IMG/VR virus record: IMGVR_UViG_3300043436_004687
Location: 62,001-126,000 of that record
Direction: 5' to 3' (one strand)
Length of the DNA: 64,000 nt
The translations under genes were made by a program, and so were the position numbers. Shown piece by piece: positions 53,195 through 62,390 of the stretch (positions are counted from its first letter, which is position 1; each line of letters opens with the position of its first letter). The notes beneath the pieces are model-generated. The model ran no database searches, was not told the origin of the DNA, and worked only from the letters and a program-made list of their open reading frames with translations.

Positions 53195-54025
53195 TTAATT
53201 ATTTTTAAGAAAATTATATAATTCACTAGAATTTAATCGTAATTTTTTTATAGTTGAAGCATTAATTTGTCTAACCCTCTCCTTTGAGAGATTAAACTTT
53301 TCACCAATATCTTCTAAATCCATTGTTTCTGGGTAAGAATTTAAACCATAGTACATTTCAATCATATCTCTCTCCCTAGGTTGTAATAAACTTAATGTTT
53401 TTTCCAACACTTTAGCTAATTTTGTATTATCTATTTTAGATAAATCTTCTTCAATACTACTATCTAATAAATATTCTAAAGCCTCATCATTATCTTCACC
53501 AATAAAATTATTTATTGAAGTACAAATTGGTAGAACTAATTCTTCATATTCTTCACCGTCAATCATTTCACCATTTATTGGATATCTTTTATTGATGGAT
53601 TCAAATCTTTCAATTCTTTTTTTATTAAGCGTTTCTTTTATTATAACATTTACTGGTAATCTAATGGTCCTAGCGTTAAAATTAAGACTTTCTATTATAG
53701 ATTGTCTAATCCAATAAACTGCATATGATATAAATTTAAATCCTTTAGTGTAATCAAATTTTTTAGCAGCTTTGATTAAACCATAATTACCTTCACTAAT
53801 TAAATCACTAAATAACAAACCTTGACCTTGATAATCCTTAGCTATTGAAACTACAAATTTTAAATTAGCTGACACTAAGGCATCGACTGCTTTAGGATCA
53901 CCATTTTGTATTCTTTTTGCTAATTCAACCTCTTCTTCTGGGGTTAAAGATTTAGTTTTTTTAATTTCTTTGAAATAATTATTTATGGTATCTTCTGAAC
54001 TAATGGTTGCATAATTACTTTTCAT
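53195..54025 (-). CDS. RNA polymerase sigma70-family factor (no region 1.1)
   Basis: ANLKFVVSIAK.Y, DLI.EGN.GL..A..KFD...GF.F.SYAV.WIRQ, region 4 LS.ERVRQI. Confidence 0.92.
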   Translation of the reverse strand: MKSNYATISSEDTINNYFKEIKKTKSLTPEEEVELAKRIQNGDPKAVDALVSANLKFVVSIAKDYQGQGLLFSDLISEGNYGLIKAAKKFDYTKGFKFISYAVYWIRQSIIESLNFNARTIRLPVNVIIKETLNKKRIERFESINKRYPINGEMIDGEEYEELVLPICTSINNFIGEDNDEALEYLLDSSIEEDLSKIDNTKLAKVLEKTLSLLQPRERDMIEMYYGLNSYPETMDLEDIGEKFNLSKERVRQINASTIKKLRLNSSELYNFLKNN

Positions 54026-54538
54026 TTATTTGTTAATATTTCCTACTTTGTTATTGTTAAAGAGCGCATTTAATATGTTTTTTTCCTCTTCATTTATATT
54101 TTCTAACCCCTTATCTAATATTTCATCAATAAGTTTTATTTTTTCTTCTTGTGAATAAACTATGGGTTCTTGTTTAAGTATTTTAATGTCAACATCAATA
54201 TACTTAACCTTAGTTTTAGGTTGCACTAAAATTTCAACCTTATTTTTATTTTGTTTGACACAAAACTTATCGAATAAATGCCCTTTAATCCTATCTGGTA
54301 AATTATAAATTAAATTTTTTTCTTCATTTATAAACAAAAAGAAAACTAAACCATCGTGTTCACTTAATAAATTTTCAATTTCACCTAATTCAAAAGCGGA
54401 TGTAAATGTTATAAAAAAATTATTTTTTATGTAAGCATAACTTGGAGCTTCATTGGAAATTGATTTTATTTCTTCTTTGAGAATTTTGCTTAATTTTTCG
54501 TCAATAAAAGCAATCAAACAATATTTTTTTATTTGCAT
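54026..54538 (-). CDS. hypothetical protein
   Basis: 170-aa ORF ending IDEILDKG. Confidence 0.7.
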   Translation of the reverse strand: MQIKKYCLIAFIDEKLSKILKEEIKSISNEAPSYAYIKNNFFITFTSAFELGEIENLLSEHDGLVFFLFINEEKNLIYNLPDRIKGHLFDKFCVKQNKNKVEILVQPKTKVKYIDVDIKILKQEPIVYSQEEKIKLIDEILDKGLENINEEEKNILNALFNNNKVGNINK

Positions 54539-54589
54539 AGTTAATATTTAATTAAGGCAAATATAGTAATAAGATCAATACTTTACAAC

Positions 54590-56833
54590 CTATTTGAGCA
54601 TTAATTTTGAGATGTGATTTATCTTATTGATTGTTATTAAGTTATCAGCCCAATTTTTAACCTCTTCTTTGTGGGTTATAAAGAAAACAATATCAAACAT
54701 GGCCTTTATTTTCTCAAACATAGGTTTAATCAATGGTATATTTTCTTCAGCAACCGTACCACTAATAACCTCATCAAATGTTATAAAATTAGGCATTGGT
54801 AGATGTGATAATTTACCCAAAACGCATCTTAATGCAATACTAGAAACGGTCTTCTCAAAACCACTACCAGATTTTAAAGGTTGTTCAATACCATCTTTAC
54901 TGATTAAATACTCCACTTCATTTTTTGAATTAATGATAAGCTCCAATTCAAAATCACAAACATCATCCATAAGTCTAACTAATTCTGAATTTATAATAGG
55001 TAAAACAGACCTTAAAACAAGTTTACTAATACCTTTTTTCCCCATCATTTCAATATAAACTTTAAAAATCTTCTCTAATTCTTCTTCAACTTTAATTTTT
55101 TTAAGTATTAATTCATTATTTAAAATAGATTTATCTTTATCCTCTAATAACAATTCCGTTGTAGTAATGAATCGATTAGAATCATCCCTTTCTTTTTCTT
55201 TGACTAGAATATCGGTTTTTACTAAAGAAACTTCGACATCGACATTACTATTAAATGTGATTGAATTCTTATTTTGTTCATATTTTTTTAAATCACTATT
55301 TTTAGATTTTATTTTTTCCCTAAGTCCATTTAATTCAACTTCTAACCTTTCTTTTTTCAATTCAAAGTTATTCTTTTTATCAACTTTAACTTTGGTTTCA
55401 TTTAAAACATCGATCTTACCTTTTAAATCTATAATAATTTTATTAATTTTCGACAATTCTTTGTGTTTATCATCTAATAAACCATTATTTTTTTTAATAT
55501 CTTCTGAGTGATCTACATTATCTAAAGGTTTTGAACATGTTGGGCAGAACTCACCATTGACAAGTTGATCAACCAACTCATTTAATTTTAATATTTCAGA
55601 ATCTAAAATTATTTTCTTAGAATTTTGCTCATTTAATGTTTTATTTAAATTTTGATATTCATTTTCATTATACTCTACATTACCTATAAGTTGTATTTCT
55701 TTAACTAAATCATCTATCTGTTGTTTAACAGATTTCCCAGTTATTGTTATTTTATCAACATCATCTTTTAAAGTTAGTGGATTTAACTGAGTAATAACAA
55801 CATCAATAGTGTGTTTAGAAGATAATAATTCATCTTTTTTATTATTTAAATTTACTAACTCATTATTAATTAATAATAAATTATTTTTTTCATTTTTTAA
55901 TAATTCTTTATTTGTATTGATGTCTTCTTTAGCTGTTGAAATTTCTTCCAGTAAAGTTGTTTCATTATATATGTTAGTTTGTTTAGTTTTAGAAAAGGAA
56001 TTATACATTTCTCTAACAGCCTTTTCTTTTAAGTCTAAAATTTCTAAACCAATAAACCTGGTTAATAACTTACCACTTTCAGTTGGTGAACTATCAATTA
56101 AATCTTCTAGATTTTTAGCGGTTGCTAATATAGTTATGTCAAAATCTTTTTCATTACCAACTATCTTTTCTATTTCTAATGAGGTTTTTTTAGCATCCTC
56201 ATCATTCATTAAGATTTCTTCACCATCTGGAAGAATTTCAAAATAGTTAACATTATTTTTTATATTAAAGCCACCCTCCCTTTTAGAACTTCTAGTCATC
56301 TTTCTTTCGATAATAATTTCTTTATTATCGAATCCTACCATACCTCTAACACTCAATTCATTTTTATCCGAAAATAAGTTAAATATTTGCTCGTTTTTAT
56401 CTGTTTTTGTTGTTTTACCAAAAAATAAAAATTTAACAGAATCAACTGAAAATGTTGTATTATGTGAAACTATACCATTTGAATAATATTGGTGGACATC
56501 ATCTACTTGAATATCGAATAAATCATTTTTTTCAGGTAGAATTTTAATATTTTCTACTTCACTTAATCCATCTATGGTTTCTATTAAATCACCAATTTTA
56601 ATTTCATTTAAATTAATGAAATCACCATTATTATTTTTTAATTTATGTAAATCAGCACCTTCAACATACATACCATTTTTTAAATCACATCTATAAACCT
56701 CGGCATTTTTTTCAGTTATACCACACCAACTAATATTATGGTAACCATAAGGATTTTTAACTTTAAACCCCAAATCACCATACTTTTCATATATTTTATT
56801 TAAATCACCAATTTTAATTTCTTTATTCATCAT
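54590..56833 (-). CDS. sbcC: split intein C-part (aa 1-125) fused to the C-extein of an SbcC/gp46-like ATPase
   Basis: Block B GADLH, blocks F/G DLFDIQV..YYSNGIVSHN|T; then coiled coil, CPTC hook, SGSGFE signature, FDE Walker B, ITH. Confidence 0.92.
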   Translation of the reverse strand: MMNKEIKIGDLNKIYEKYGDLGFKVKNPYGYHNISWCGITEKNAEVYRCDLKNGMYVEGADLHKLKNNNGDFINLNEIKIGDLIETIDGLSEVENIKILPEKNDLFDIQVDDVHQYYSNGIVSHNTTFSVDSVKFLFFGKTTKTDKNEQIFNLFSDKNELSVRGMVGFDNKEIIIERKMTRSSKREGGFNIKNNVNYFEILPDGEEILMNDEDAKKTSLEIEKIVGNEKDFDITILATAKNLEDLIDSSPTESGKLLTRFIGLEILDLKEKAVREMYNSFSKTKQTNIYNETTLLEEISTAKEDINTNKELLKNEKNNLLLINNELVNLNNKKDELLSSKHTIDVVITQLNPLTLKDDVDKITITGKSVKQQIDDLVKEIQLIGNVEYNENEYQNLNKTLNEQNSKKIILDSEILKLNELVDQLVNGEFCPTCSKPLDNVDHSEDIKKNNGLLDDKHKELSKINKIIIDLKGKIDVLNETKVKVDKKNNFELKKERLEVELNGLREKIKSKNSDLKKYEQNKNSITFNSNVDVEVSLVKTDILVKEKERDDSNRFITTTELLLEDKDKSILNNELILKKIKVEEELEKIFKVYIEMMGKKGISKLVLRSVLPIINSELVRLMDDVCDFELELIINSKNEVEYLISKDGIEQPLKSGSGFEKTVSSIALRCVLGKLSHLPMPNFITFDEVISGTVAEENIPLIKPMFEKIKAMFDIVFFITHKEEVKNWADNLITINKINHISKLMLK

Positions 56834-57839
56834 TATTTTTTAAAAAATTAATACATTTATTTAATTCTACTTCTGGATTACTTCTATATTCCGAATCCCA
56901 TATTATTAAAACCTCAAAACCTTCTTTTTTAGCTAAGTTTATTTTTTTTTCATCTCTATCCCAAATCTCTTTAGCGGTTAATTTTTTATTAAATGGGTTT
57001 GGGAAACTGTCTGCATTATAAAGTTTAGGATTCCCATGAAATAAATCGCCATTATATTCAATAATTTTTTTATTTTTTAAATCAGTAAAATCATATCTAA
57101 AAAAACTTCTTTTATCTTTTATCATTAACTCACCACCCATTTCACTAAATTTAATATAATTTAAATCGCTCAAATTATAAATTTTAATTAATTCTCTAAA
57201 CATTTTTTGAGATATTTCAGAACAACCTACTTTTAATTTGCCATTTCTAAATAAACTTTCTTGCCATTTAATTTGTCTTTCATTCCAAACTTTTAAACCC
57301 TCTTCTTCCCCATACTTTTCTATGCATTTTGATAAATTAAATGTAGTTTGTCTTTCAGATTGTTTTATTTTAGCTTCTTCTTTATTAAACCCTTTTTTTA
57401 ACCAAAATTCGATATTAGCACTACCCATTTTACCACAAGTACTTCTTAACTTTTCCCTACTATTCCATTTTAACAATCCTTCTTTTTCACCAAATCTAGC
57501 AATACAGCCTTTTAAAGAGCACATTTTTTGGCCGTCTGTTTGATCTTTAGCTTCCTTATCAGAATAACCTCTACTAGTCCAATATTCAATATTCGTTGGT
57601 TGTAACGTCTTAACATGTTTTATTGCCTCTTCTTCATTTAAACCTCTTTGTATCCAATATTTTATAGAATAAGCCGACCCTTTTGCAATTGAAACCCCAC
57701 TATTTTTTAATCTATTAGTAATTACCTCTGGATCAACATTAAACTTATCTGCAATAAATCTTGTTGATTTTAACTCAATTAAATATAAATTAACCATTTC
57801 ATTTAATTGTTCTTCTGTAAATTTAATTTTATTCGCCAT
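56823..57839 (-). CDS. free-standing Vsr-like/PD-(D/E)XK homing endonuclease with internal repeats
   Basis: C-terminal IIEYNGDLFHGNP..W.RD..K...LIIWDSE; three YW..RG-type repeats. Confidence 0.8.
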   Translation of the reverse strand: MANKIKFTEEQLNEMVNLYLIELKSTRFIADKFNVDPEVITNRLKNSGVSIAKGSAYSIKYWIQRGLNEEEAIKHVKTLQPTNIEYWTSRGYSDKEAKDQTDGQKMCSLKGCIARFGEKEGLLKWNSREKLRSTCGKMGSANIEFWLKKGFNKEEAKIKQSERQTTFNLSKCIEKYGEEEGLKVWNERQIKWQESLFRNGKLKVGCSEISQKMFRELIKIYNLSDLNYIKFSEMGGELMIKDKRSFFRYDFTDLKNKKIIEYNGDLFHGNPKLYNADSFPNPFNKKLTAKEIWDRDEKKINLAKKEGFEVLIIWDSEYRSNPEVELNKCINFLKNNDE

Positions 57840-57897
57840 TATATCTATTTTAAAATAAATATAACCGACTAATTAAAAAGGCAAATAGATTTAAATT

Positions 57898-58473
57898 TTA
57901 TTTTAGTTCATCAGGTAAAAAACCTATTTTTTTTATTATTTCACTGGGGTCAAATTCAATATCTATAATAGTATCATATTTCACACATTTACCACCAAAA
58001 TTTGCTGGTGATGATGTGATTATATTAAGCCCACTTAACTTATCAAATGAAATAAAATTACCTTCTCCAAAACAAAGAAAATTATTTATACTCAACCATT
58101 TTAATGAATAAGATCTTTGTTTCACATCTTCACCATGAAAACTAACATCCGTATTAATTTTATCATCTAACTTTAAAAGTCTATCAAAATCAACATCTTT
58201 TTTTTCATTATCAAACCAACTTTTCATTAATTGTCTTTGATAATTCACATCCATTATATTTTCAACCCCAGCTCCAGTTATCTCAATTAGCTCACCATTT
58301 TTATCTGTTTTAACTGGTGTATAAATAACCGTAATATTTTCTTTATTTATATTATATTTTTTAGAAAAATCATTTCTAATTTTTAATTTAGCTTCTCTAG
58401 AATAATTTTCTGTTTTATCAGACCATTGTACTTTTACCTTTGCATTAGGTGGAACCATTAATTTATCTTTCAT
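57898..58473 (-). CDS. sbcC: SbcC/gp46 N-extein (162 aa) plus a 29-aa split intein N-part
   Basis: LSINNFLCFG, then NFGGK|CVKYDTII (intein block A) and a stop 29 aa later. Confidence 0.9.
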   Translation of the reverse strand: MKDKLMVPPNAKVKVQWSDKTENYSREAKLKIRNDFSKKYNINKENITVIYTPVKTDKNGELIEITGAGVENIMDVNYQRQLMKSWFDNEKKDVDFDRLLKLDDKINTDVSFHGEDVKQRSYSLKWLSINNFLCFGEGNFISFDKLSGLNIITSSPANFGGKCVKYDTIIDIEFDPSEIIKKIGFLPDELK

Positions 58474-58485
58474 TAATTTAATATT

Positions 58486-58680
58486 TTATTTATTTATCTT
58501 TTTTTCCCAAATTTTATAACCTTCATTATAACAAAAATTATGAAATTCATCACTTTGATTTACTATCCAACTCCCATTATCTAATTTAATTGAACCACCA
58601 TTTTTATTTATGTACCAACTAATAAAATCATTATTTGATGAAAATAAACGCATGCAAAAGTATTTTAAATATTTACTCAT
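58486..58680 (-). CDS. hypothetical protein
   Basis: 64-aa ORF. Confidence 0.6.
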   Translation of the reverse strand: MSKYLKYFCMRLFSSNNDFISWYINKNGGSIKLDNGSWIVNQSDEFHNFCYNEGYKIWEKKINK

Positions 58681-58858
58681 CTTTTTCTATTTTAAAACCA
58701 CAAGATTCACACTTACCATATTTTTCGGAACATTCTAAGCATATTTTATCACAAGGGATATGTGCAGTAGATACTTCTGTATCACACAATTCACATTTAC
58801 CATAAGAAAATGCATGTAATACTATTTTATTTTTACAAGAGCTGCAATAGTTACTCAT
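58673..58858 (-). CDS. small Cys-rich zinc-finger protein
   Basis: Four CxxC-type pairs. Confidence 0.65.
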   Translation of the reverse strand: MSNYCSSCKNKIVLHAFSYGKCELCDTEVSTAHIPCDKICLECSEKYGKCESCGFKIEKDE

Positions 58859-59064
58859 TATTTAATTTCATATTTAATAACATCAAATATTGGTTCGAAT
58901 TTTGATGTTTCCTTATTTAACTTTAAAGCCATATATGTACCCGCTGGACCATCATTTATATATCCAGGTATGTAATAATTAATATAATACATAGAATTAT
59001 TACTATCTTCAATAAAACAATATTTATAATAAAGTTTAGCTATGACATTCTTAATAACTTTCAT
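58858..59064 (-). CDS. hypothetical protein
   Basis: 68-aa ORF. Confidence 0.55.
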   Translation of the reverse strand: MKVIKNVIAKLYYKYCFIEDSNNSMYYINYYIPGYINDGPAGTYMALKLNKETSKFEPIFDVIKYEIK

Positions 59065-59065
59065 A

Positions 59066-59290
59066 TTATTTATTGGTTAGGATTTCTTTATTATTTTCAA
59101 TATCCTCAACAGATTTAACCTTAAAATTATAAAAACCAAAGTTTGTTTCTATATTATGTTCAGTAAATTCTCTACTTTCAACATCCCAACTTAAAAACCC
59201 ATGATTACCAACAGATTCCCCAAAATTGTTTTGTAAAAGACTACCGCTAAAACAAATAGGTGTTAATTTTTTTATTTTAATTTTTTTCAT
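59066..59290 (-). CDS. sbcD: C-terminal fragment of the SbcD/gp47-like nuclease
   Basis: ICFSGSLLQNNFGE..HGFL.WD matches the Y.GS..Q..FGE segment that follows GDIH in Mre11/SbcD. Confidence 0.85.
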   Translation of the reverse strand: MKKIKIKKLTPICFSGSLLQNNFGESVGNHGFLSWDVESREFTEHNIETNFGFYNFKVKSVEDIENNKEILTNK

Positions 59291-59294
59291 ATTT

Positions 59295-60149
59295 TTATAC
59301 TGTTAAATTATTAAACCAATTAATAACTTCTTTATTTTTATTATCATAACCCATAAAATTAATTTTATATCTAATATTTAAACTATTGAAATAAAGTAAA
59401 GAAGCCTCACATTTTAATTTAAAATTATTAATATTAATTATATAACCTTTTACTTCTTCCATTATTTTAGTACCATCTTTATTAATAATTAAAAAATCTG
59501 GTAAATATCTTTTTACTTTATTATCTTCAATATATTTAATTACATGACCATGTTTTTTTGTCCAAAAAATAACCTCATCATCTAAATCTAATTCATTCAT
59601 CCTTTTCTCTTCAAAAGATGAATGATAATATTCTTTAACATTTGTTTTTTTATTATCATAATACCCTCTTTTAAAATTATTTGAACCAATAACCCCATTT
59701 TCAGATATTCGTTTAATATTAGCTATTGAAATTTTATTTCTAAATTCATCATTTTGAAAATCAAAACTACCATCTTCAGTTCTATGCCTATCTAAGAATG
59801 CTAAATGTTTCACTAATCTTTCAGGAGTTTCCCAACTTTCTGTTATTTTTTTACTTATTAACAACCTCATATCAGCATTATGGAAACCCCATTTATTTTC
59901 TCTACCAAAATTACCATTATTTTCACCTAACTGATAATATTTTTGCCAATTTATTTGACAACTTATTGAACAAAATTTACGTTTAGCTGTGATTGTGGTT
60001 TCAAATATATTAGTACAACCAGTGTATTCACATTGTTTATTAATTCTTTCTAATTTTTTATTAGATTGCCCACAAATTCTGGAACAATATTTTTGTTTTG
60101 TTTTATAAGTTTTAAATTCTAATTTACAAGATTCACAAGTTTTTATCAT
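59295..60149 (-). CDS. free-standing endonuclease: Cys/Zn repeats plus a TnsA-like PD-(D/E)XK domain; start reassigned to MIKTC
   Basis: C..C...KYCS..C twice; S.FE, Y.PDF, EVKG; TATTTATA motif lies inside the longer ORF-track extension. Confidence 0.75.
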   Translation of the reverse strand: MIKTCESCKLEFKTYKTKQKYCSRICGQSNKKLERINKQCEYTGCTNIFETTITAKRKFCSISCQINWQKYYQLGENNGNFGRENKWGFHNADMRLLISKKITESWETPERLVKHLAFLDRHRTEDGSFDFQNDEFRNKISIANIKRISENGVIGSNNFKRGYYDNKKTNVKEYYHSSFEEKRMNELDLDDEVIFWTKKHGHVIKYIEDNKVKRYLPDFLIINKDGTKIMEEVKGYIININNFKLKCEASLLYFNSLNIRYKINFMGYDNKNKEVINWFNNLTV

Positions 60150-60195
60150 ATTTATATCTTTATTTATAAATATCACCAAAAAAAACTAAATCACA

Positions 60196-60882
60196 TTAAT
60201 TATCAATTAACCACCCATCTTTTATATATTGTTTTAACTCATTTTCATCAATTTCTTTAGTTTGTTTATAATAAAAATTTTGCCTTTTATGAATATCACC
60301 AAGCATTACGATATCACAACCCTCAAAATGTTCTAATGAAGTTGCGTGCTCAAATTCATAACCAATATCTGTTTTTGCACCTAATATTGGCCCATGAAAA
60401 AGTCCTATTGTAGTATATTCACCCTTATTATTAATTTTAAAAGCTTCAATATCTGGTCTTTCATTATCCTGAAAAATGGAATAATTTGCCCAGATAATAT
60501 TATCATCCAAATAACATTCACTATCTTTAAAATAAGAAATGTTTGGGTTGTTTAATAATTTAACCATGGGAGTGATAGAATCCATTCTATCTTTATTATT
60601 TAGATTTAAATCATGGTTACCAGCCACTATTATAAGTGGCGCAATATCAGAGAGTTTTTTTAAAAATTGAGTACATATTGTTAATTGTTCATTGGAGATT
60701 ATTGTCTTGCTATGTACCAGATCACCAACTAAAGCAATTCTAACTTCACTATATTCATACCCCACCATTAATTCTTTTAATTTAAGATATAAATCATCAA
60801 ATACTTCTTGAAACTCTTTATGTAAGACATAGGTTCTGATATGGATATCACTAATGTGAAAAATTAATTTTACTTTATTCAT
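60196..60882 (-). CDS. sbcD: N-terminal fragment of the SbcD/gp47-like nuclease
   Basis: SDIH, GDLVH, GNHD, FHG, GDIH motifs; stops before the GS..Q..FGE segment. Confidence 0.9.
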   Translation of the reverse strand: MNKVKLIFHISDIHIRTYVLHKEFQEVFDDLYLKLKELMVGYEYSEVRIALVGDLVHSKTIISNEQLTICTQFLKKLSDIAPLIIVAGNHDLNLNNKDRMDSITPMVKLLNNPNISYFKDSECYLDDNIIWANYSIFQDNERPDIEAFKINNKGEYTTIGLFHGPILGAKTDIGYEFEHATSLEHFEGCDIVMLGDIHKRQNFYYKQTKEIDENELKQYIKDGWLIDN

Positions 60883-60951
60883 TTAATATTATTTATTGCA
60901 AATATAAATTCAAAACTAATAAGTTGCAACTATTTATAGTAAAATAATAGA

Positions 60952-61443
60952 ATGAAAGAATTTATATTAAATAAACTAAGAGAGAATTTATTAAAAGAGT
61001 CTGTAGACACTAAAAAGTTGTTAGATTTAGCCTTAAAAAGTTCGTTTGAAAGTGAAAGTTTAGCTAAAAATTATATCACAAAATCAATAAAAGAATTAAA
61101 TAACTTACCTGATATAATTACATTATATAGGGTTATATTTGCTAAAGATAAAAATTCAATAAATCAAAAAGAAATTGGTAGTCATTATGTGATGAATAGA
61201 AGACAATTAGAACAAAGTCATCAATTTATTAGTCATGTGGGTGGTGGGACTCCATTTATGTTAACAGTAAAGGCACCAAAATCATTAATTGATTTGGAAA
61301 CTACGTTGGAGAACAAAGTAATGTACCCACATGAAAATGAAATAACTTTAAAGAATAAAGGTGTTGGTGCTAAGATAATTAGGATTGACTCATTTCAAGC
61401 GGAAGAAGATGGATTTGATGGATTTGATCCTTATGATTATTAA
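60952..61443 (+). CDS. hypothetical protein with ADP-ribosyltransferase-like motifs
   Basis: LYR ... GSH ... ENE spacing (R-S-ExE). Confidence 0.45.
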   Translation: MKEFILNKLRENLLKESVDTKKLLDLALKSSFESESLAKNYITKSIKELNNLPDIITLYRVIFAKDKNSINQKEIGSHYVMNRRQLEQSHQFISHVGGGTPFMLTVKAPKSLIDLETTLENKVMYPHENEITLKNKGVGAKIIRIDSFQAEEDGFDGFDPYDY

Positions 61444-62390
61444 ATTCTACTTTCTTTAAGTTTATGTGCCGTTTTTAAGACATTATAAACCCCCCTTTTT
61501 GATTGTTTTTGGTGAATTAATGATAAGTCCCAATCTTCACCTAATTTAACGATTCTAACCCTATTATATAAATTTAAAGTATTTAATTGTTTATATAATC
61601 TAACAGCATCTTTATAAGCATCACCATCAAACACAATTACAACTAAACCAGTTGCTTTATATTGTAAGTCGTAAAATAATTTTTCAGAAACCATTTTACC
61701 CAAATTTATTATTGGGTTAGGGCAAACTATCCCATCGAATGCACCCTCAACAAGATATATCGTTGCATCCCAATTAATCATTGATTCATTAAAATGAATG
61801 AGTGTTTTTTTAAATTCTGGGTTTAAATATTTAGGTTTACCCCACTTTAAAAAAGTTCTTGCAATAAAAAAATCTAATTCGTTATTTAAATTATATGATG
61901 GAATTATAATTCTATTTGCAAATTTACCTATTGTGGTAAAACCAATTTTATATTTTTCTATTATATCTGGGGTAATATTCCTAATTTTTAAATAAGTCAT
62001 AGCTTCTTTATATTTTGGAATATTGGGGTTGCAGTTAATTAATGGAGTATAACCCTCTGGTAAAGAAATTACTTCAGAAATTAGTGGTATATTATCTTCT
62101 GTTTTGTAAATTGGGTTTACTAGGGAATAATCTTTTAAGTTTTGTGATGTCCCAAATCTTTTTATTAACTTAGGTAATGAACCACCCATATTATCAGTAT
62201 CATAACAAGACCAACATCTAAATTTATTTTTAATGTAATTTACTTCTAAATTATGTTTACCATCACCTTTTGTTAGACCCTTATTAAATGCACATGCTGG
62301 GCAATCATATTGCAATTGCCCAGAATCCTCATTATGATAATGAGGTTCACCTAAAAAACTATCTAATATATTTACAATTAAATGTGACAT
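61440..62390 (-). CDS. DnaG-type DNA primase (zinc finger + TOPRIM)
   Basis: CPAC..CWSC, RIIIP, YLVEG.FD, FDGDA. Confidence 0.85.
   Translation of the reverse strand: MSHLIVNILDSFLGEPHYHNEDSGQLQYDCPACAFNKGLTKGDGKHNLEVNYIKNKFRCWSCYDTDNMGGSLPKLIKRFGTSQNLKDYSLVNPIYKTEDNIPLISEVISLPEGYTPLINCNPNIPKYKEAMTYLKIRNITPDIIEKYKIGFTTIGKFANRIIIPSYNLNNELDFFIARTFLKWGKPKYLNPEFKKTLIHFNESMINWDATIYLVEGAFDGIVCPNPIINLGKMVSEKLFYDLQYKATGLVVIVFDGDAYKDAVRLYKQLNTLNLYNRVRIVKLGEDWDLSLIHQKQSKRGVYNVLKTAHKLKESRI

What the first reader, a model, noticed from the sequence alone, without database searches (positions are those of the whole stretch)
59066..60882. sbcD is also fractured by an endonuclease, with no intein or intron to rejoin it
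Seen: the nuclease stops 30 aa after GDIH with an acidic tail (KEIDENELKQYIKDGWLIDN). The rest of the domain (CFSGSLLQNNFGE..HGFL.WD) is a separate 74-aa ORF with a basic head (MKKIKIKK). Between them is a PD-(D/E)XK endonuclease, with only 46 nt and 4 nt of flanking spacer, too little for a group I core. Known: Aeh1 nrdA split by mobE assembles non-covalently. Inference: the charge-complementary tails let the two pieces dock, so this SbcCD is built from four gene pieces rescued by two different mechanisms.
Basis: partly seen in the sequence, partly recalled or inferred. Interest (0 to 1): 0.72.

Follow-up and report, generated by a model that had tools for sequence, protein, structure and literature searches.

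The report
Phage sbcD split by endonuclease cassette
In this lake-water jumbo phage a mobile endonuclease cassette cuts the SbcD (Mre11-type) repair nuclease gene into two genes, and the cassette also supplies a conserved tail and head that are predicted to clip the two protein pieces together without splicing. One such sbcD locus was already noted in 2009, so this is a well-documented new member, not a new kind.

Summary
The three ORFs on the minus strand are sbcD-N (228 aa, all Mre11/SbcD metal motifs), a 284-aa PD-(D/E)XK (TnsA-like) endonuclease, and sbcD-C (74 aa). The spacers are 46 nt and 4 nt.

There is no sign of an intron or an intein. Contiguous relatives (86% and 80% identical) lack exactly a 995-nt cassette: a 20-aa tail, the endonuclease and a 9-aa head.

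The tail and head are conserved peptides. Y219 and W224 are invariant in 47 split alleles. They lie in a confidently predicted N/C interface (ipSAE 0.92, best control 0.00). In a few uninterrupted homologues the same sequence is an in-frame strand-helix-strand-loop-strand insert, and the break falls in its loop.

The cassette is a presence/absence polymorphism between alleles 99.5% identical upstream of the break. It carries either of two nuclease types. It also persists as a split gene after the endonuclease has decayed or been lost.

It is not new. Dassa et al. 2009 described a Lake Gatun sbcD locus split by a Vsr-like endonuclease, with 25 and 9 extra residues at the break. Crona et al. 2011 showed that such tails are essential in Aeh1 NrdA.

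The parts
60196..60882 (-). sbcD-N (228 aa plus stop). It is an Mre11/SbcD phosphoesterase with motifs I-V. Residues 1-208 are homologous to contiguous SbcD.
   Evidence: Pfam Metallophos 7.3e-10 and PHROG 100. D12, H14, D54, N89, H90, H163, D196 and H198 are invariant in 47 homologues. dN/dS is 0.08 against contiguous relatives.
60199..60258 (-). Tail: the last 20 residues of sbcD-N (K209-N228). It is acidic (net -3) and absent from contiguous alleles.
   Evidence: Junction alignment with L181 and L179. Y219 and W224 are invariant, and E213 and G223 are at least 90% conserved. The invariant Gly uses 3 codons, and pN/pS is 0.55. Residues 209-214, 216, 219 and 222-227 lie in the predicted interface.
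60150..60195 (-). 46-nt spacer between the sbcD-N stop and the endonuclease ATG. A 9-bp inverted repeat here overlaps the start codon.
   Evidence: Sequence. The stem appears in the RNA fold, but the fold is not better than shuffles (z = 0.00).
59295..60149 (-). Free-standing endonuclease (284 aa). It has two Cys4 zinc-ribbon modules and a helical region, followed by a TnsA-like PD-(D/E)XK nuclease domain.
   Evidence: Invariant PD...ExK and 8 conserved Cys. The AF2 model matches TnsA. Many homologues carry PF08722. The L001 homologue passes the Pfam cut-off (27.2 against 26.5).
59066..59290 (-). sbcD-C (74 aa plus stop). It supplies the remaining strands of the SbcD core and a small C-terminal part.
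   Evidence: PHROG 100 positions 221-287. It is 90% identical to P0002 residues 208-274. S17, E25 and H30 are invariant in 53 sequences. dN/dS is 0.05-0.12.
59264..59290 (-). Head: the first 9 residues of sbcD-C (MKKIKIKKL). It is basic (+5) and absent from contiguous alleles.
   Evidence: Junction alignment. The K-I-K-I-K-K head is conserved in 13 split loci. Residues 1-19 lie in the predicted interface.
59264..60258 (-). The whole 995-nt cassette (tail, stop, spacer, endonuclease, spacer, head). It is missing from the nearest contiguous alleles.
   Evidence: DNA and codon alignment with L181 and L179. The same kind of indel separates L183 from L184, where 1007 nt replace 37 nt.
57898..58473 (-). 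sbcC N-piece. It ends ...GGK, followed by a 29-residue N-intein part that starts with Cys.
   Evidence: ORF. Alignment with the contiguous SbcC of L006.
56823..57839 (-). Second free-standing endonuclease (338 aa, Vsr-like), lying between the sbcC pieces.
   Evidence: ORF. Its nuclease region is homologous to the Vsr-like endonuclease that splits sbcD in L005 (E 3e-5).
54590..56833 (-). A C-intein part of about 125 residues (ending ...SHN), followed by the sbcC C-piece starting TTF...
   Evidence: Weak matches to solved inteins gp41-1 (E 0.008), VidaL and CatC. Weak Pfam HINT and Intein_splicing hits. The junction restores GGK|TT.

Best explanation
A homing-type cassette sits in sbcD at the tip of the beta-hairpin that follows metal motif V (GDIH). 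The cassette encodes three things:
- the last 20 residues of the upstream piece (the end of a strand, a helix and a short strand);
- a free-standing zinc-ribbon plus TnsA-like PD-(D/E)XK endonuclease;
- the first 9 residues of the downstream piece (a basic strand).

The gene is expressed as two separate polypeptides. sbcD-N carries all the metal ligands, and sbcD-C supplies the remaining core strands. They reassemble non-covalently into one Mre11/SbcD domain. The tail and head come together as a small folded module at the break.

Shown here:
- the anatomy and the exact limits of the cassette;
- conservation of the tail and head as peptides;
- cassette presence/absence between near-identical alleles;
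- two nuclease types at the same site;
- split alleles that have lost the endonuclease;
- purifying selection on both pieces.

Predicted by models only: that the two pieces bind, and how the insert folds.

Inferred: that the endonuclease cuts cassette-free alleles and spreads the cassette by homing, that the tail and head are needed for assembly or activity, and that the assembled enzyme works with the intein-spliced SbcC.
For: Anatomy is.

Cassette limits:
- The nearest relatives P0002 (86% identical) and P0003 (80%) are contiguous. They read ...YKGT|PICF..., with no tail or head.
- In P0004 against P0080 the N-terminal part is 195/196 identical, yet one is split and the other contiguous.
- At the DNA level, 1007 nt in the split allele replace 37 nt in the contiguous one, between flanks 92-96% identical.

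Mobility:
- On a tree of 150 N-terminal core sequences the split state changes 28 times.
- At least 14 of those changes are forced by well-supported branches.
- The mean for shuffled labels is 50.
- The window groups (100% support) with the two contiguous alleles.

The tail and head are functional peptides:
- Tail residues are invariant across 47 alleles whose overall identity falls as low as 35%.
- Synonymous codons vary at conserved tail positions.
- Heads are conserved in 13 loci.

The split persists without the endonuclease:
- L020 has 4 nt between the stop and the next ATG.
- L052 has about 60 nt.
- L027 and L097 keep only endonuclease remnants of 100 and 86 aa.
- In L004 the endonuclease is broken by a stop.

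Binding: ESMFold2 ipSAE was 0.92, 0.92 and 0.91 against a best control of 0.00. In the tool's calibration the mark was reached by 58 of 80 solved complexes and 2 of 110 mismatched pairs, and those counts hold only roughly here because I supplied my own alignments. The interface includes tail residues 209-227 and head residues 1-19.

Fold of the insert: the contiguous homologue P0213 carries the insert in frame. Its AF2 model has pLDDT 96 and shows strand 199-206, helix 207-215, strand 219-221, loop 222-229 and strand 230-237, with the break mapping to the loop. The whole model matches Mre11/SbcD structures.

Selection: dN/dS is 0.05-0.12 for both pieces.

No splicing element:
- An Rfam scan at E up to 10 found no intron family.
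- The cassette borders fold no better than shuffles (z = 0.00 and +1.18).
- The two pieces are in different frames.

Precedent: PMC3045599 and PMC2677866.
Against: - No protein, RNA or activity data exist for this phage, and no RNA run was listed.
- The complex score is a model's confidence. A split single domain would be expected to score high whether or not the tails matter.
- In the Aeh1 precedent the tails were not required for heterodimer formation (PMC3045599).
- dN/dS against contiguous relatives cannot be assigned to the split lineage alone.
- Homing is inferred from distribution. Cleavage was not tested, and the tree cannot tell gain from loss.
- The window's cassette has no close sampled donor. 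The nearest endonuclease is 58% identical.
Confidence: 0.75

Rival explanations
1. The tail plus head is an ancestral in-frame insert subdomain of some SbcDs with a role of its own, for example contact with SbcC or DNA. The endonuclease simply landed in its surface loop. On this view the tails are not an antidote brought by the mobile element, and they are not there to glue the pieces.
For: Uninterrupted SbcD-SbcC fusion proteins P0156, P0213 and P0252 carry tail-like plus head-like sequence in frame. P0141, P0181, P0185 and P0124 carry other inserts at the same loop. The insert folds confidently as a compact module. P0252 and the split L001 share the specific WPEA.F.GS junction.
Against: Among close relatives, the tail and head are present only together with a split and are absent from contiguous alleles that are 99.5% identical upstream. 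They therefore behave as part of the cassette. The contiguous insert-bearing forms could equally be re-fusions after endonuclease loss, and split alleles without an endonuclease exist as intermediates. The two readings are not mutually exclusive: an ancestral insert could have been captured into the cassette.
Confidence: 0.3
2. The split sbcD is a dead gene, inactivated by the endonuclease insertion, and the pieces are decaying remnants.
For: It is the only sbcD copy and it is interrupted. No expression data exist.
Against: All catalytic motifs and the C-piece invariants are intact. dN/dS is 0.05-0.12. In the homologue searches 80 of the 150 closest protein clusters are split alleles with conserved tails. 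Split alleles outlive their endonuclease. The start of sbcD-C lies 4 nt after the endonuclease stop codon.
Confidence: 0.05
3. The endonuclease lies inside a self-splicing intron whose ends overlap the tail and head codons, and the mRNA is spliced to a contiguous sbcD.
For: Phage endonuclease genes often sit in group I introns, and upstream exon frames commonly read on into an intron.
Against: No Rfam intron match at E up to 10. The borders have no structure beyond shuffles. The tail and head are conserved as amino-acid sequences with synonymous variation. L020 keeps tail, stop, 4 nt, ATG and head with no room for any ribozyme. The same tail and head are translated in frame in contiguous homologues.
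Confidence: 0.03
4. The tail and head are remnants of a degenerate split intein, an origin that Crona et al. discussed for the NrdA tails.
For: The neighbouring sbcC carries a split intein with a similarly short N part (29 residues). Vsr-like endonucleases of this kind usually sit between split-intein halves (PMC2677866).
Against: There is no Cys/Ser/Thr at tail position 1 and no terminal His-Asn before the C-extein. The 29 residues together are far too short for a HINT fold. The in-frame version folds as strand-helix-strand-loop-strand, not as HINT. Pfam finds no intein match in either piece.
Confidence: 0.05

Closest known systems
SbcD-like fractured gene from Lake Gatun GOS data (Dassa et al. 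2009, NAR 37:2560, PMC2677866)
   Same: Same host gene, and the same absence of an intein. There are extra residues at the break (25 at the C-end of the upstream ORF, 9 at the N-end of the downstream ORF) that contiguous SbcDs lack. The source is freshwater. The endonuclease 3' end and the downstream ORF are tightly packed.
   Different: That locus holds a Vsr-like endonuclease. The window holds a TnsA-like PD-(D/E)XK endonuclease with a related zinc-ribbon N-terminal region (E 3e-8). The Vsr-like type occurs here in L004-L006, L019, L022, L060 and L101. The paper reported one locus and did not analyse conservation, fold, mobility or endonuclease-free alleles.
Aeromonas phage Aeh1 NrdA-a / MobE / NrdA-b (Friedrich et al. 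2007; Crona et al. 2011, PMC3045599)
   Same: An essential gene is split by a free-standing endonuclease, with no RNA or protein splicing. [quoted passage not shown] The pieces assemble non-covalently.
   Different: The host enzyme (ribonucleotide reductase) and the endonuclease family (HNH) differ. The charge polarity is reversed: the NrdA-a tail is basic and the NrdA-b tail acidic. It is known from a single phage. There the tails were shown experimentally to be essential for activity and for dimerisation of heterodimers, but not for heterodimer formation. Nothing is measured here, but here there are many natural alleles, in-frame versions and endonuclease-free versions.
Fractured genes with split inteins and an intervening endonuclease (Dassa et al. 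2009)
   Same: The gene order is N-piece, free-standing endonuclease, C-piece. The endonuclease families are the same, and so is the ecological setting. The window's own sbcC is of this kind.
   Different: sbcD has no intein blocks at the break, so the pieces cannot be ligated by trans-splicing.
T4 topoisomerase genes 39 and 60 separated by mobA, and split gp43 DNA polymerases of T4-like phages
   Same: These are phage replication or repair genes in pieces, associated with free-standing endonucleases. Tail-like extensions were noted on gp39 and gp60 (PMC3045599).
   Different: The genes and endonucleases are different. No conserved folded tail-plus-head module or cassette polymorphism has been described for them in the papers read here.

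Membership tests
Mre11/SbcD nuclease (calcineurin-like phosphoesterase) | Phosphoesterase metal-binding motifs I-V (DxH, GD, GNHD, H, GDxH) | tested here: met
   All motifs lie in sbcD-N. Pfam Metallophos is 40 bits against a cut-off of 21.5. D12, H14, D54, N89, H90, H163, D196 and H198 are invariant.
Mre11/SbcD nuclease (calcineurin-like phosphoesterase) | A complete nuclease-domain fold like solved Mre11/SbcD structures | tested here: met
   The AF2 model of the contiguous homologue P0213 residues 1-290 (pLDDT 96) matches Mre11 and SbcD structures at E 6e-11 to 1e-6. In the window the fold needs both pieces. sbcD-C corresponds to PHROG 100 positions 221-287.
Mre11/SbcD nuclease (calcineurin-like phosphoesterase) | Nuclease activity together with an SbcC/Rad50 partner | not testable with these tools
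   sbcC is present downstream in two intein-bearing pieces.
Gene fractured by a free-standing endonuclease and reassembled through tails (Aeh1 NrdA type) | The host gene is cut into two ORFs by a free-standing endonuclease gene, and contiguous homologues exist | tested here: met
Gene fractured by a free-standing endonuclease and reassembled through tails (Aeh1 NrdA type) | Tail sequences at the break that are absent from contiguous homologues | tested here: met
   A 20-aa tail and a 9-aa head. They are conserved across split alleles.
Gene fractured by a free-standing endonuclease and reassembled through tails (Aeh1 NrdA type) | No RNA or protein splicing | tested here: inconclusive
   The sequence evidence is all negative for splicing. 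No transcript or protein data could be obtained.
Gene fractured by a free-standing endonuclease and reassembled through tails (Aeh1 NrdA type) | The pieces assemble non-covalently, and the tails are needed for activity | not testable with these tools
   There is only a prediction: ipSAE 0.92 against a best control of 0.00, with tail and head in the interface.
Split-intein fractured gene | Intein blocks at the break: Cys/Ser/Thr at intein position 1, terminal His-Asn, a +1 nucleophile, and a HINT fold | tested here: not met
   For sbcD, the tail starts with Lys, there is no His-Asn before the C-extein, the two extensions total 29 residues, and there is no Pfam intein hit. For sbcC the features are met: Cys1...SHN, +1 Thr, and weak matches to solved inteins.
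Group I or group II intron carrying an endonuclease ORF | A ribozyme core flanking or surrounding the ORF | tested here: not met
   No Rfam match at E up to 10 over 54000-62000. Border folds give z = 0.00 and +1.18. The endonuclease-free split allele L020 has a 4-nt spacer.
PD-(D/E)XK nuclease, TnsA-like (for the 284-aa ORF) | PD...(D/E)xK catalytic motif on a restriction-endonuclease-like fold | tested here: met
   P217-D218 and E232-x-K234 are invariant. Foldseek matches TnsA at E 7e-5 to 1e-3. The window's own Pfam score is below the cut-off (19.7 against 26.5), but the L001 homologue passes.
Homing endonuclease (functional sense) | Cleaves the cassette-free allele and drives copying of its own gene into it | not testable with these tools
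   The support is indirect: cassette presence/absence between 99.5%-identical alleles, changed codons next to the break, and 28 state changes on the tree. One homologue carries a NUMOD3 motif.

The most novel reading that the evidence does not exclude
The unit tail-endonuclease-head may be a self-neutralising mobile element of a third kind, alongside introns (RNA level) and inteins (covalent, protein level). On this reading it carries a small portable folding module that re-joins the host protein non-covalently. It has exchanged its nuclease domain (TnsA-like or Vsr-like) while keeping the same zinc-ribbon targeting region, tail and head. After the endonuclease decays it leaves either a permanently two-gene SbcD or, by re-fusion, an in-frame insert 'scar'. 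That would make these lake and marine jumbo-phage alleles a natural record of a whole homing cycle.
Probability: 0.4. Interest if true: 0.7.

Novelty: new member of a known kind. Interest (0 to 1): 0.45.

Why it matters
Crona et al. proposed that tails may be a general way to neutralise gene fragmentation by mobile elements, but their evidence came from a single phage. This sbcD system offers many natural alleles in every state:
- empty site;
- split with either of two endonuclease types;
- split with a decaying endonuclease;
- split with no endonuclease;
- in-frame insert.

That makes the idea testable by comparison and by simple biochemistry. The 20 + 9 residue module could also serve as a small natural tag pair for reassembling split proteins. 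For annotation, short 'SbcD' ORFs of about 227 aa and about 75 aa in jumbo-phage genomes should be read as two halves of one working gene, not as pseudogenes.

Tried and rejected
- A DNA search of the phage collection with the region found nothing.
- The word-indexed protein search with the 74-aa C-piece found only itself. C-pieces were therefore taken from loci instead.
I dropped that row and also the L052 row and the partial P-protein rows, and did not resend them. As a result the C-piece alignment had only 13 rows.
- PDB sequence searches with both endonuclease types gave nothing useful.
- The promoter and terminator scan was uninformative in this AT-rich DNA: 28 promoter-like sites against 21 expected.
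- No RNA-seq run could be listed. The DNA runs showed no cassette-free joint in the same lakes.
- A 30-nt motif from the spacer does not recur in the window.
- I rejected the intron, intein, pseudogene, read-through (the frames differ and the stop is TAA) and assembly-artefact readings, for the reasons given under the rival explanations.
Full report
**Observation**

On the minus strand the window holds three ORFs:
- a 228-aa ORF at 60882..60196;
- an endonuclease ORF at 60149..59295 from its ATG (284 aa);
- a 74-aa ORF at 59290..59066.

The spacers are 46 nt and 4 nt. The first ORF passes Pfam Metallophos (7.3e-10) and matches PHROG 100 (SbcD-like) over profile positions 25-223. The third ORF matches the same PHROG at 221-287. 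GDIH is residues 195-198 and the protein ends 30 residues later. The two sbcD pieces are in different frames.

The genome is a 339,635-bp virus record with direct terminal repeats, from lake-water metagenomes. It holds only this one sbcD, in two pieces. Contigs from four independent runs reproduce the arrangement.

**What the contiguous relatives show**

A search with the N-piece returned 2286 proteins in two length classes:
- About 226-228 aa, covering the whole query and ending in a conserved tail.
- About 270-275 aa, covering about 89% of the query and running straight from ...YKG[TI] into PIAYPSSLIQQNFGE.

The two nearest relatives, P0002 (86% identical) and P0003 (80%), are contiguous. 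Codon alignment places the end of homology after T208 of the N-piece and its resumption at T10 of the C-piece. So 995 nt (60258..59264) are extra: a 20-aa tail, the stop, a 46-nt spacer, the endonuclease, a 4-nt spacer and a 9-aa head.

**The tail and head are conserved peptides, not junk or intron RNA**

- In 47 split N-pieces, down to 35% overall identity, Y219 and W224 are invariant and E213 and G223 are at least 90% conserved. That is as conserved as the catalytic residues.
- In 12 loci the invariant Gly uses three codons and the invariant Ile two. Pooled pN/pS for the tail is 0.55.
- Heads in 13 split loci keep a K-I-K-I-K-K strand.
- An Rfam scan at E up to 10 finds no intron.
- RNA folds at both cassette borders are no better than shuffles.

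**The cassette is the unit of presence or absence**

A census of 176 related loci shows mostly contiguous genes, plus the following split alleles:
- Split by a TnsA-like endonuclease: the window, L001, L007, L033, L034 and L183.
- Split by a Vsr-like endonuclease: L004 (broken by a stop), L005, L006, L019, L022, L060 and L101.
- Holding only an endonuclease remnant: L027 and L097.
- Holding no endonuclease at all: L020 (stop, 4 nt, ATG) and L052.

The two endonuclease types share their zinc-ribbon N-terminal region (E 3e-8) but have unrelated nuclease domains. The Vsr-like type is homologous to the 338-aa endonuclease inside the window's sbcC (E 3e-5).

On a tree of 150 N-terminal core sequences, with the tail left out, the split state needs 28 changes. 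At least 14 are forced by well-supported branches, and the mean for shuffled labels is 50. The window groups at 100% support with contiguous P0002 and P0003.

P0004 (split) and P0080 (contiguous) are 195/196 identical up to GDIH. At the DNA level, 1007 nt in the split allele replace 37 nt of the contiguous one, between flanks 92-96% identical. The cassette therefore brings its own version of about 10 codons upstream and about 5 downstream of the break. This is the expected footprint of homing or of recombinational loss. The tree cannot say which.

**How the pieces fit**

ESMFold2 scored the N/C pair at 0.92, 0.92 and 0.91 (ipSAE) against a best control of 0.00. In the tool's calibration that mark was reached by 58 of 80 solved complexes and 2 of 110 mismatched pairs. 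Those counts hold only roughly here, because I supplied my own alignments.

There are about 195 contacts. The interface includes N-piece residues 188-214, 216, 219 and 222-227, and C-piece residues 1-19. The interface is far larger than the tails. This is a single domain cut in two.

A few uninterrupted SbcD-SbcC fusion proteins (P0156, P0213, P0252) carry tail-like plus head-like sequence in frame. The AF2 model of P0213 residues 1-290 (pLDDT 96) shows the insert as strand 199-206, helix 207-215, strand 219-221, loop 222-229 and strand 230-237. The rest of the model matches Mre11 and SbcD structures. The natural break falls in the loop.

So the tail and head are two halves of a small folded module that extends the hairpin after motif V. 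Both pieces are under strong purifying selection against contiguous relatives (dN/dS 0.05-0.12).

**The endonuclease**

P217-D218 and E232-x-K234 are invariant, and eight Cys are conserved in two zinc-ribbon modules. The AF2 model (pLDDT 90) best matches Tn7 TnsA. Many homologues carry PF08722 and one carries NUMOD3. The PD-(D/E)XK assignment is sound. Cleavage specificity is untested.

**The neighbour sbcC**

The upstream sbcC piece ends GGK followed by a 29-residue segment that starts with Cys. The downstream piece starts with about 125 residues ending ...SHN, followed by TTF. Together the exteins restore the Walker A sequence GGK|TT seen in the contiguous SbcC of L006. The C-part gives weak matches to solved inteins (gp41-1 E 0.008, VidaL, CatC). 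So 'four pieces, two mechanisms' is a fair description at the sequence level.

**Comparison with what is known**

Dassa et al. 2009 (PMC2677866) described a Lake Gatun locus in which SbcD-like N and C ORFs are separated by a Vsr-like endonuclease, with no intein. It has 25 C-terminal and 9 N-terminal residues at the break that other SbcDs lack. This is the same system.

Crona et al. [quoted passage not shown] They predicted that such tails would be found elsewhere.

The window adds a TnsA-like endonuclease variant at the same site. The comparative work here adds conservation of the tail and head, the cassette limits, mobility, endonuclease-free split alleles, in-frame versions and a fold model for the tail and head.

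**Verdict**

The finding is a new member of a known kind, of moderate interest.

Noticed in passing
window 57898-58473 and 54590-56833 (minus strand): The sbcC split intein is atypically divided: an N part of only about 29 residues and a C part of about 125 residues, inserted in the Walker A loop (GGK|TT). Its weak PDB matches include VidaL, along with gp41-1 and CatC.
   Followed up: partly
window 60148-60173 (minus strand): A 9-bp inverted repeat (ATATTTATA, 8 nt, TATAAATAT) ends inside the endonuclease ATG. It could sequester the start codon, as reported for other phage free-standing endonucleases. The fold is not better than shuffles.
   Followed up: partly
window 60140-60182: In the lake-water runs, short stretches of 35-43 nt here also lie on other contigs with unrelated flanks and different depths (up to 26.7). 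This suggests a sequence shared with other loci, perhaps other endonuclease leaders. It does not recur elsewhere in the window.
   Followed up: partly
window 59593-59625 (minus strand): A 13-bp stem-loop lies inside the endonuclease ORF. It scored as terminator-like and gave a chance-level CRISPR-repeat hit.
   Followed up: no
L002 5001-8201, L003 4998-8606, L001 7596-10181: In many relatives SbcD and SbcC are one fused polypeptide of about 1050-1200 aa. In L001 and L052 the C-piece of the split SbcD is fused to SbcC.
   Followed up: partly
L005 against L006 (downstream of sbcD): Two contigs carry the identical sbcD N-piece (P0098), yet one has the sbcC intein and endonuclease and the other a contiguous sbcC. 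The sbcC element is therefore also a presence/absence polymorphism.
   Followed up: partly
window 58486-59064 (minus strand): Three small ORFs (68, 61 and 64 aa) lie between sbcD-C and sbcC. The 61-aa ORF is Cys-rich and gives a sub-threshold Pfam double-zinc-ribbon match. Relatives have different small ORFs here, and L179 and L180 have a resolvase/MerR-like gene instead.
   Followed up: no
window 53195-54025 and 61440-62390: A sigma-70-like factor gene and a DnaG-like primase gene flank the sbcCD block. The same gene order recurs in relatives (L004-L007, L183).
   Followed up: no
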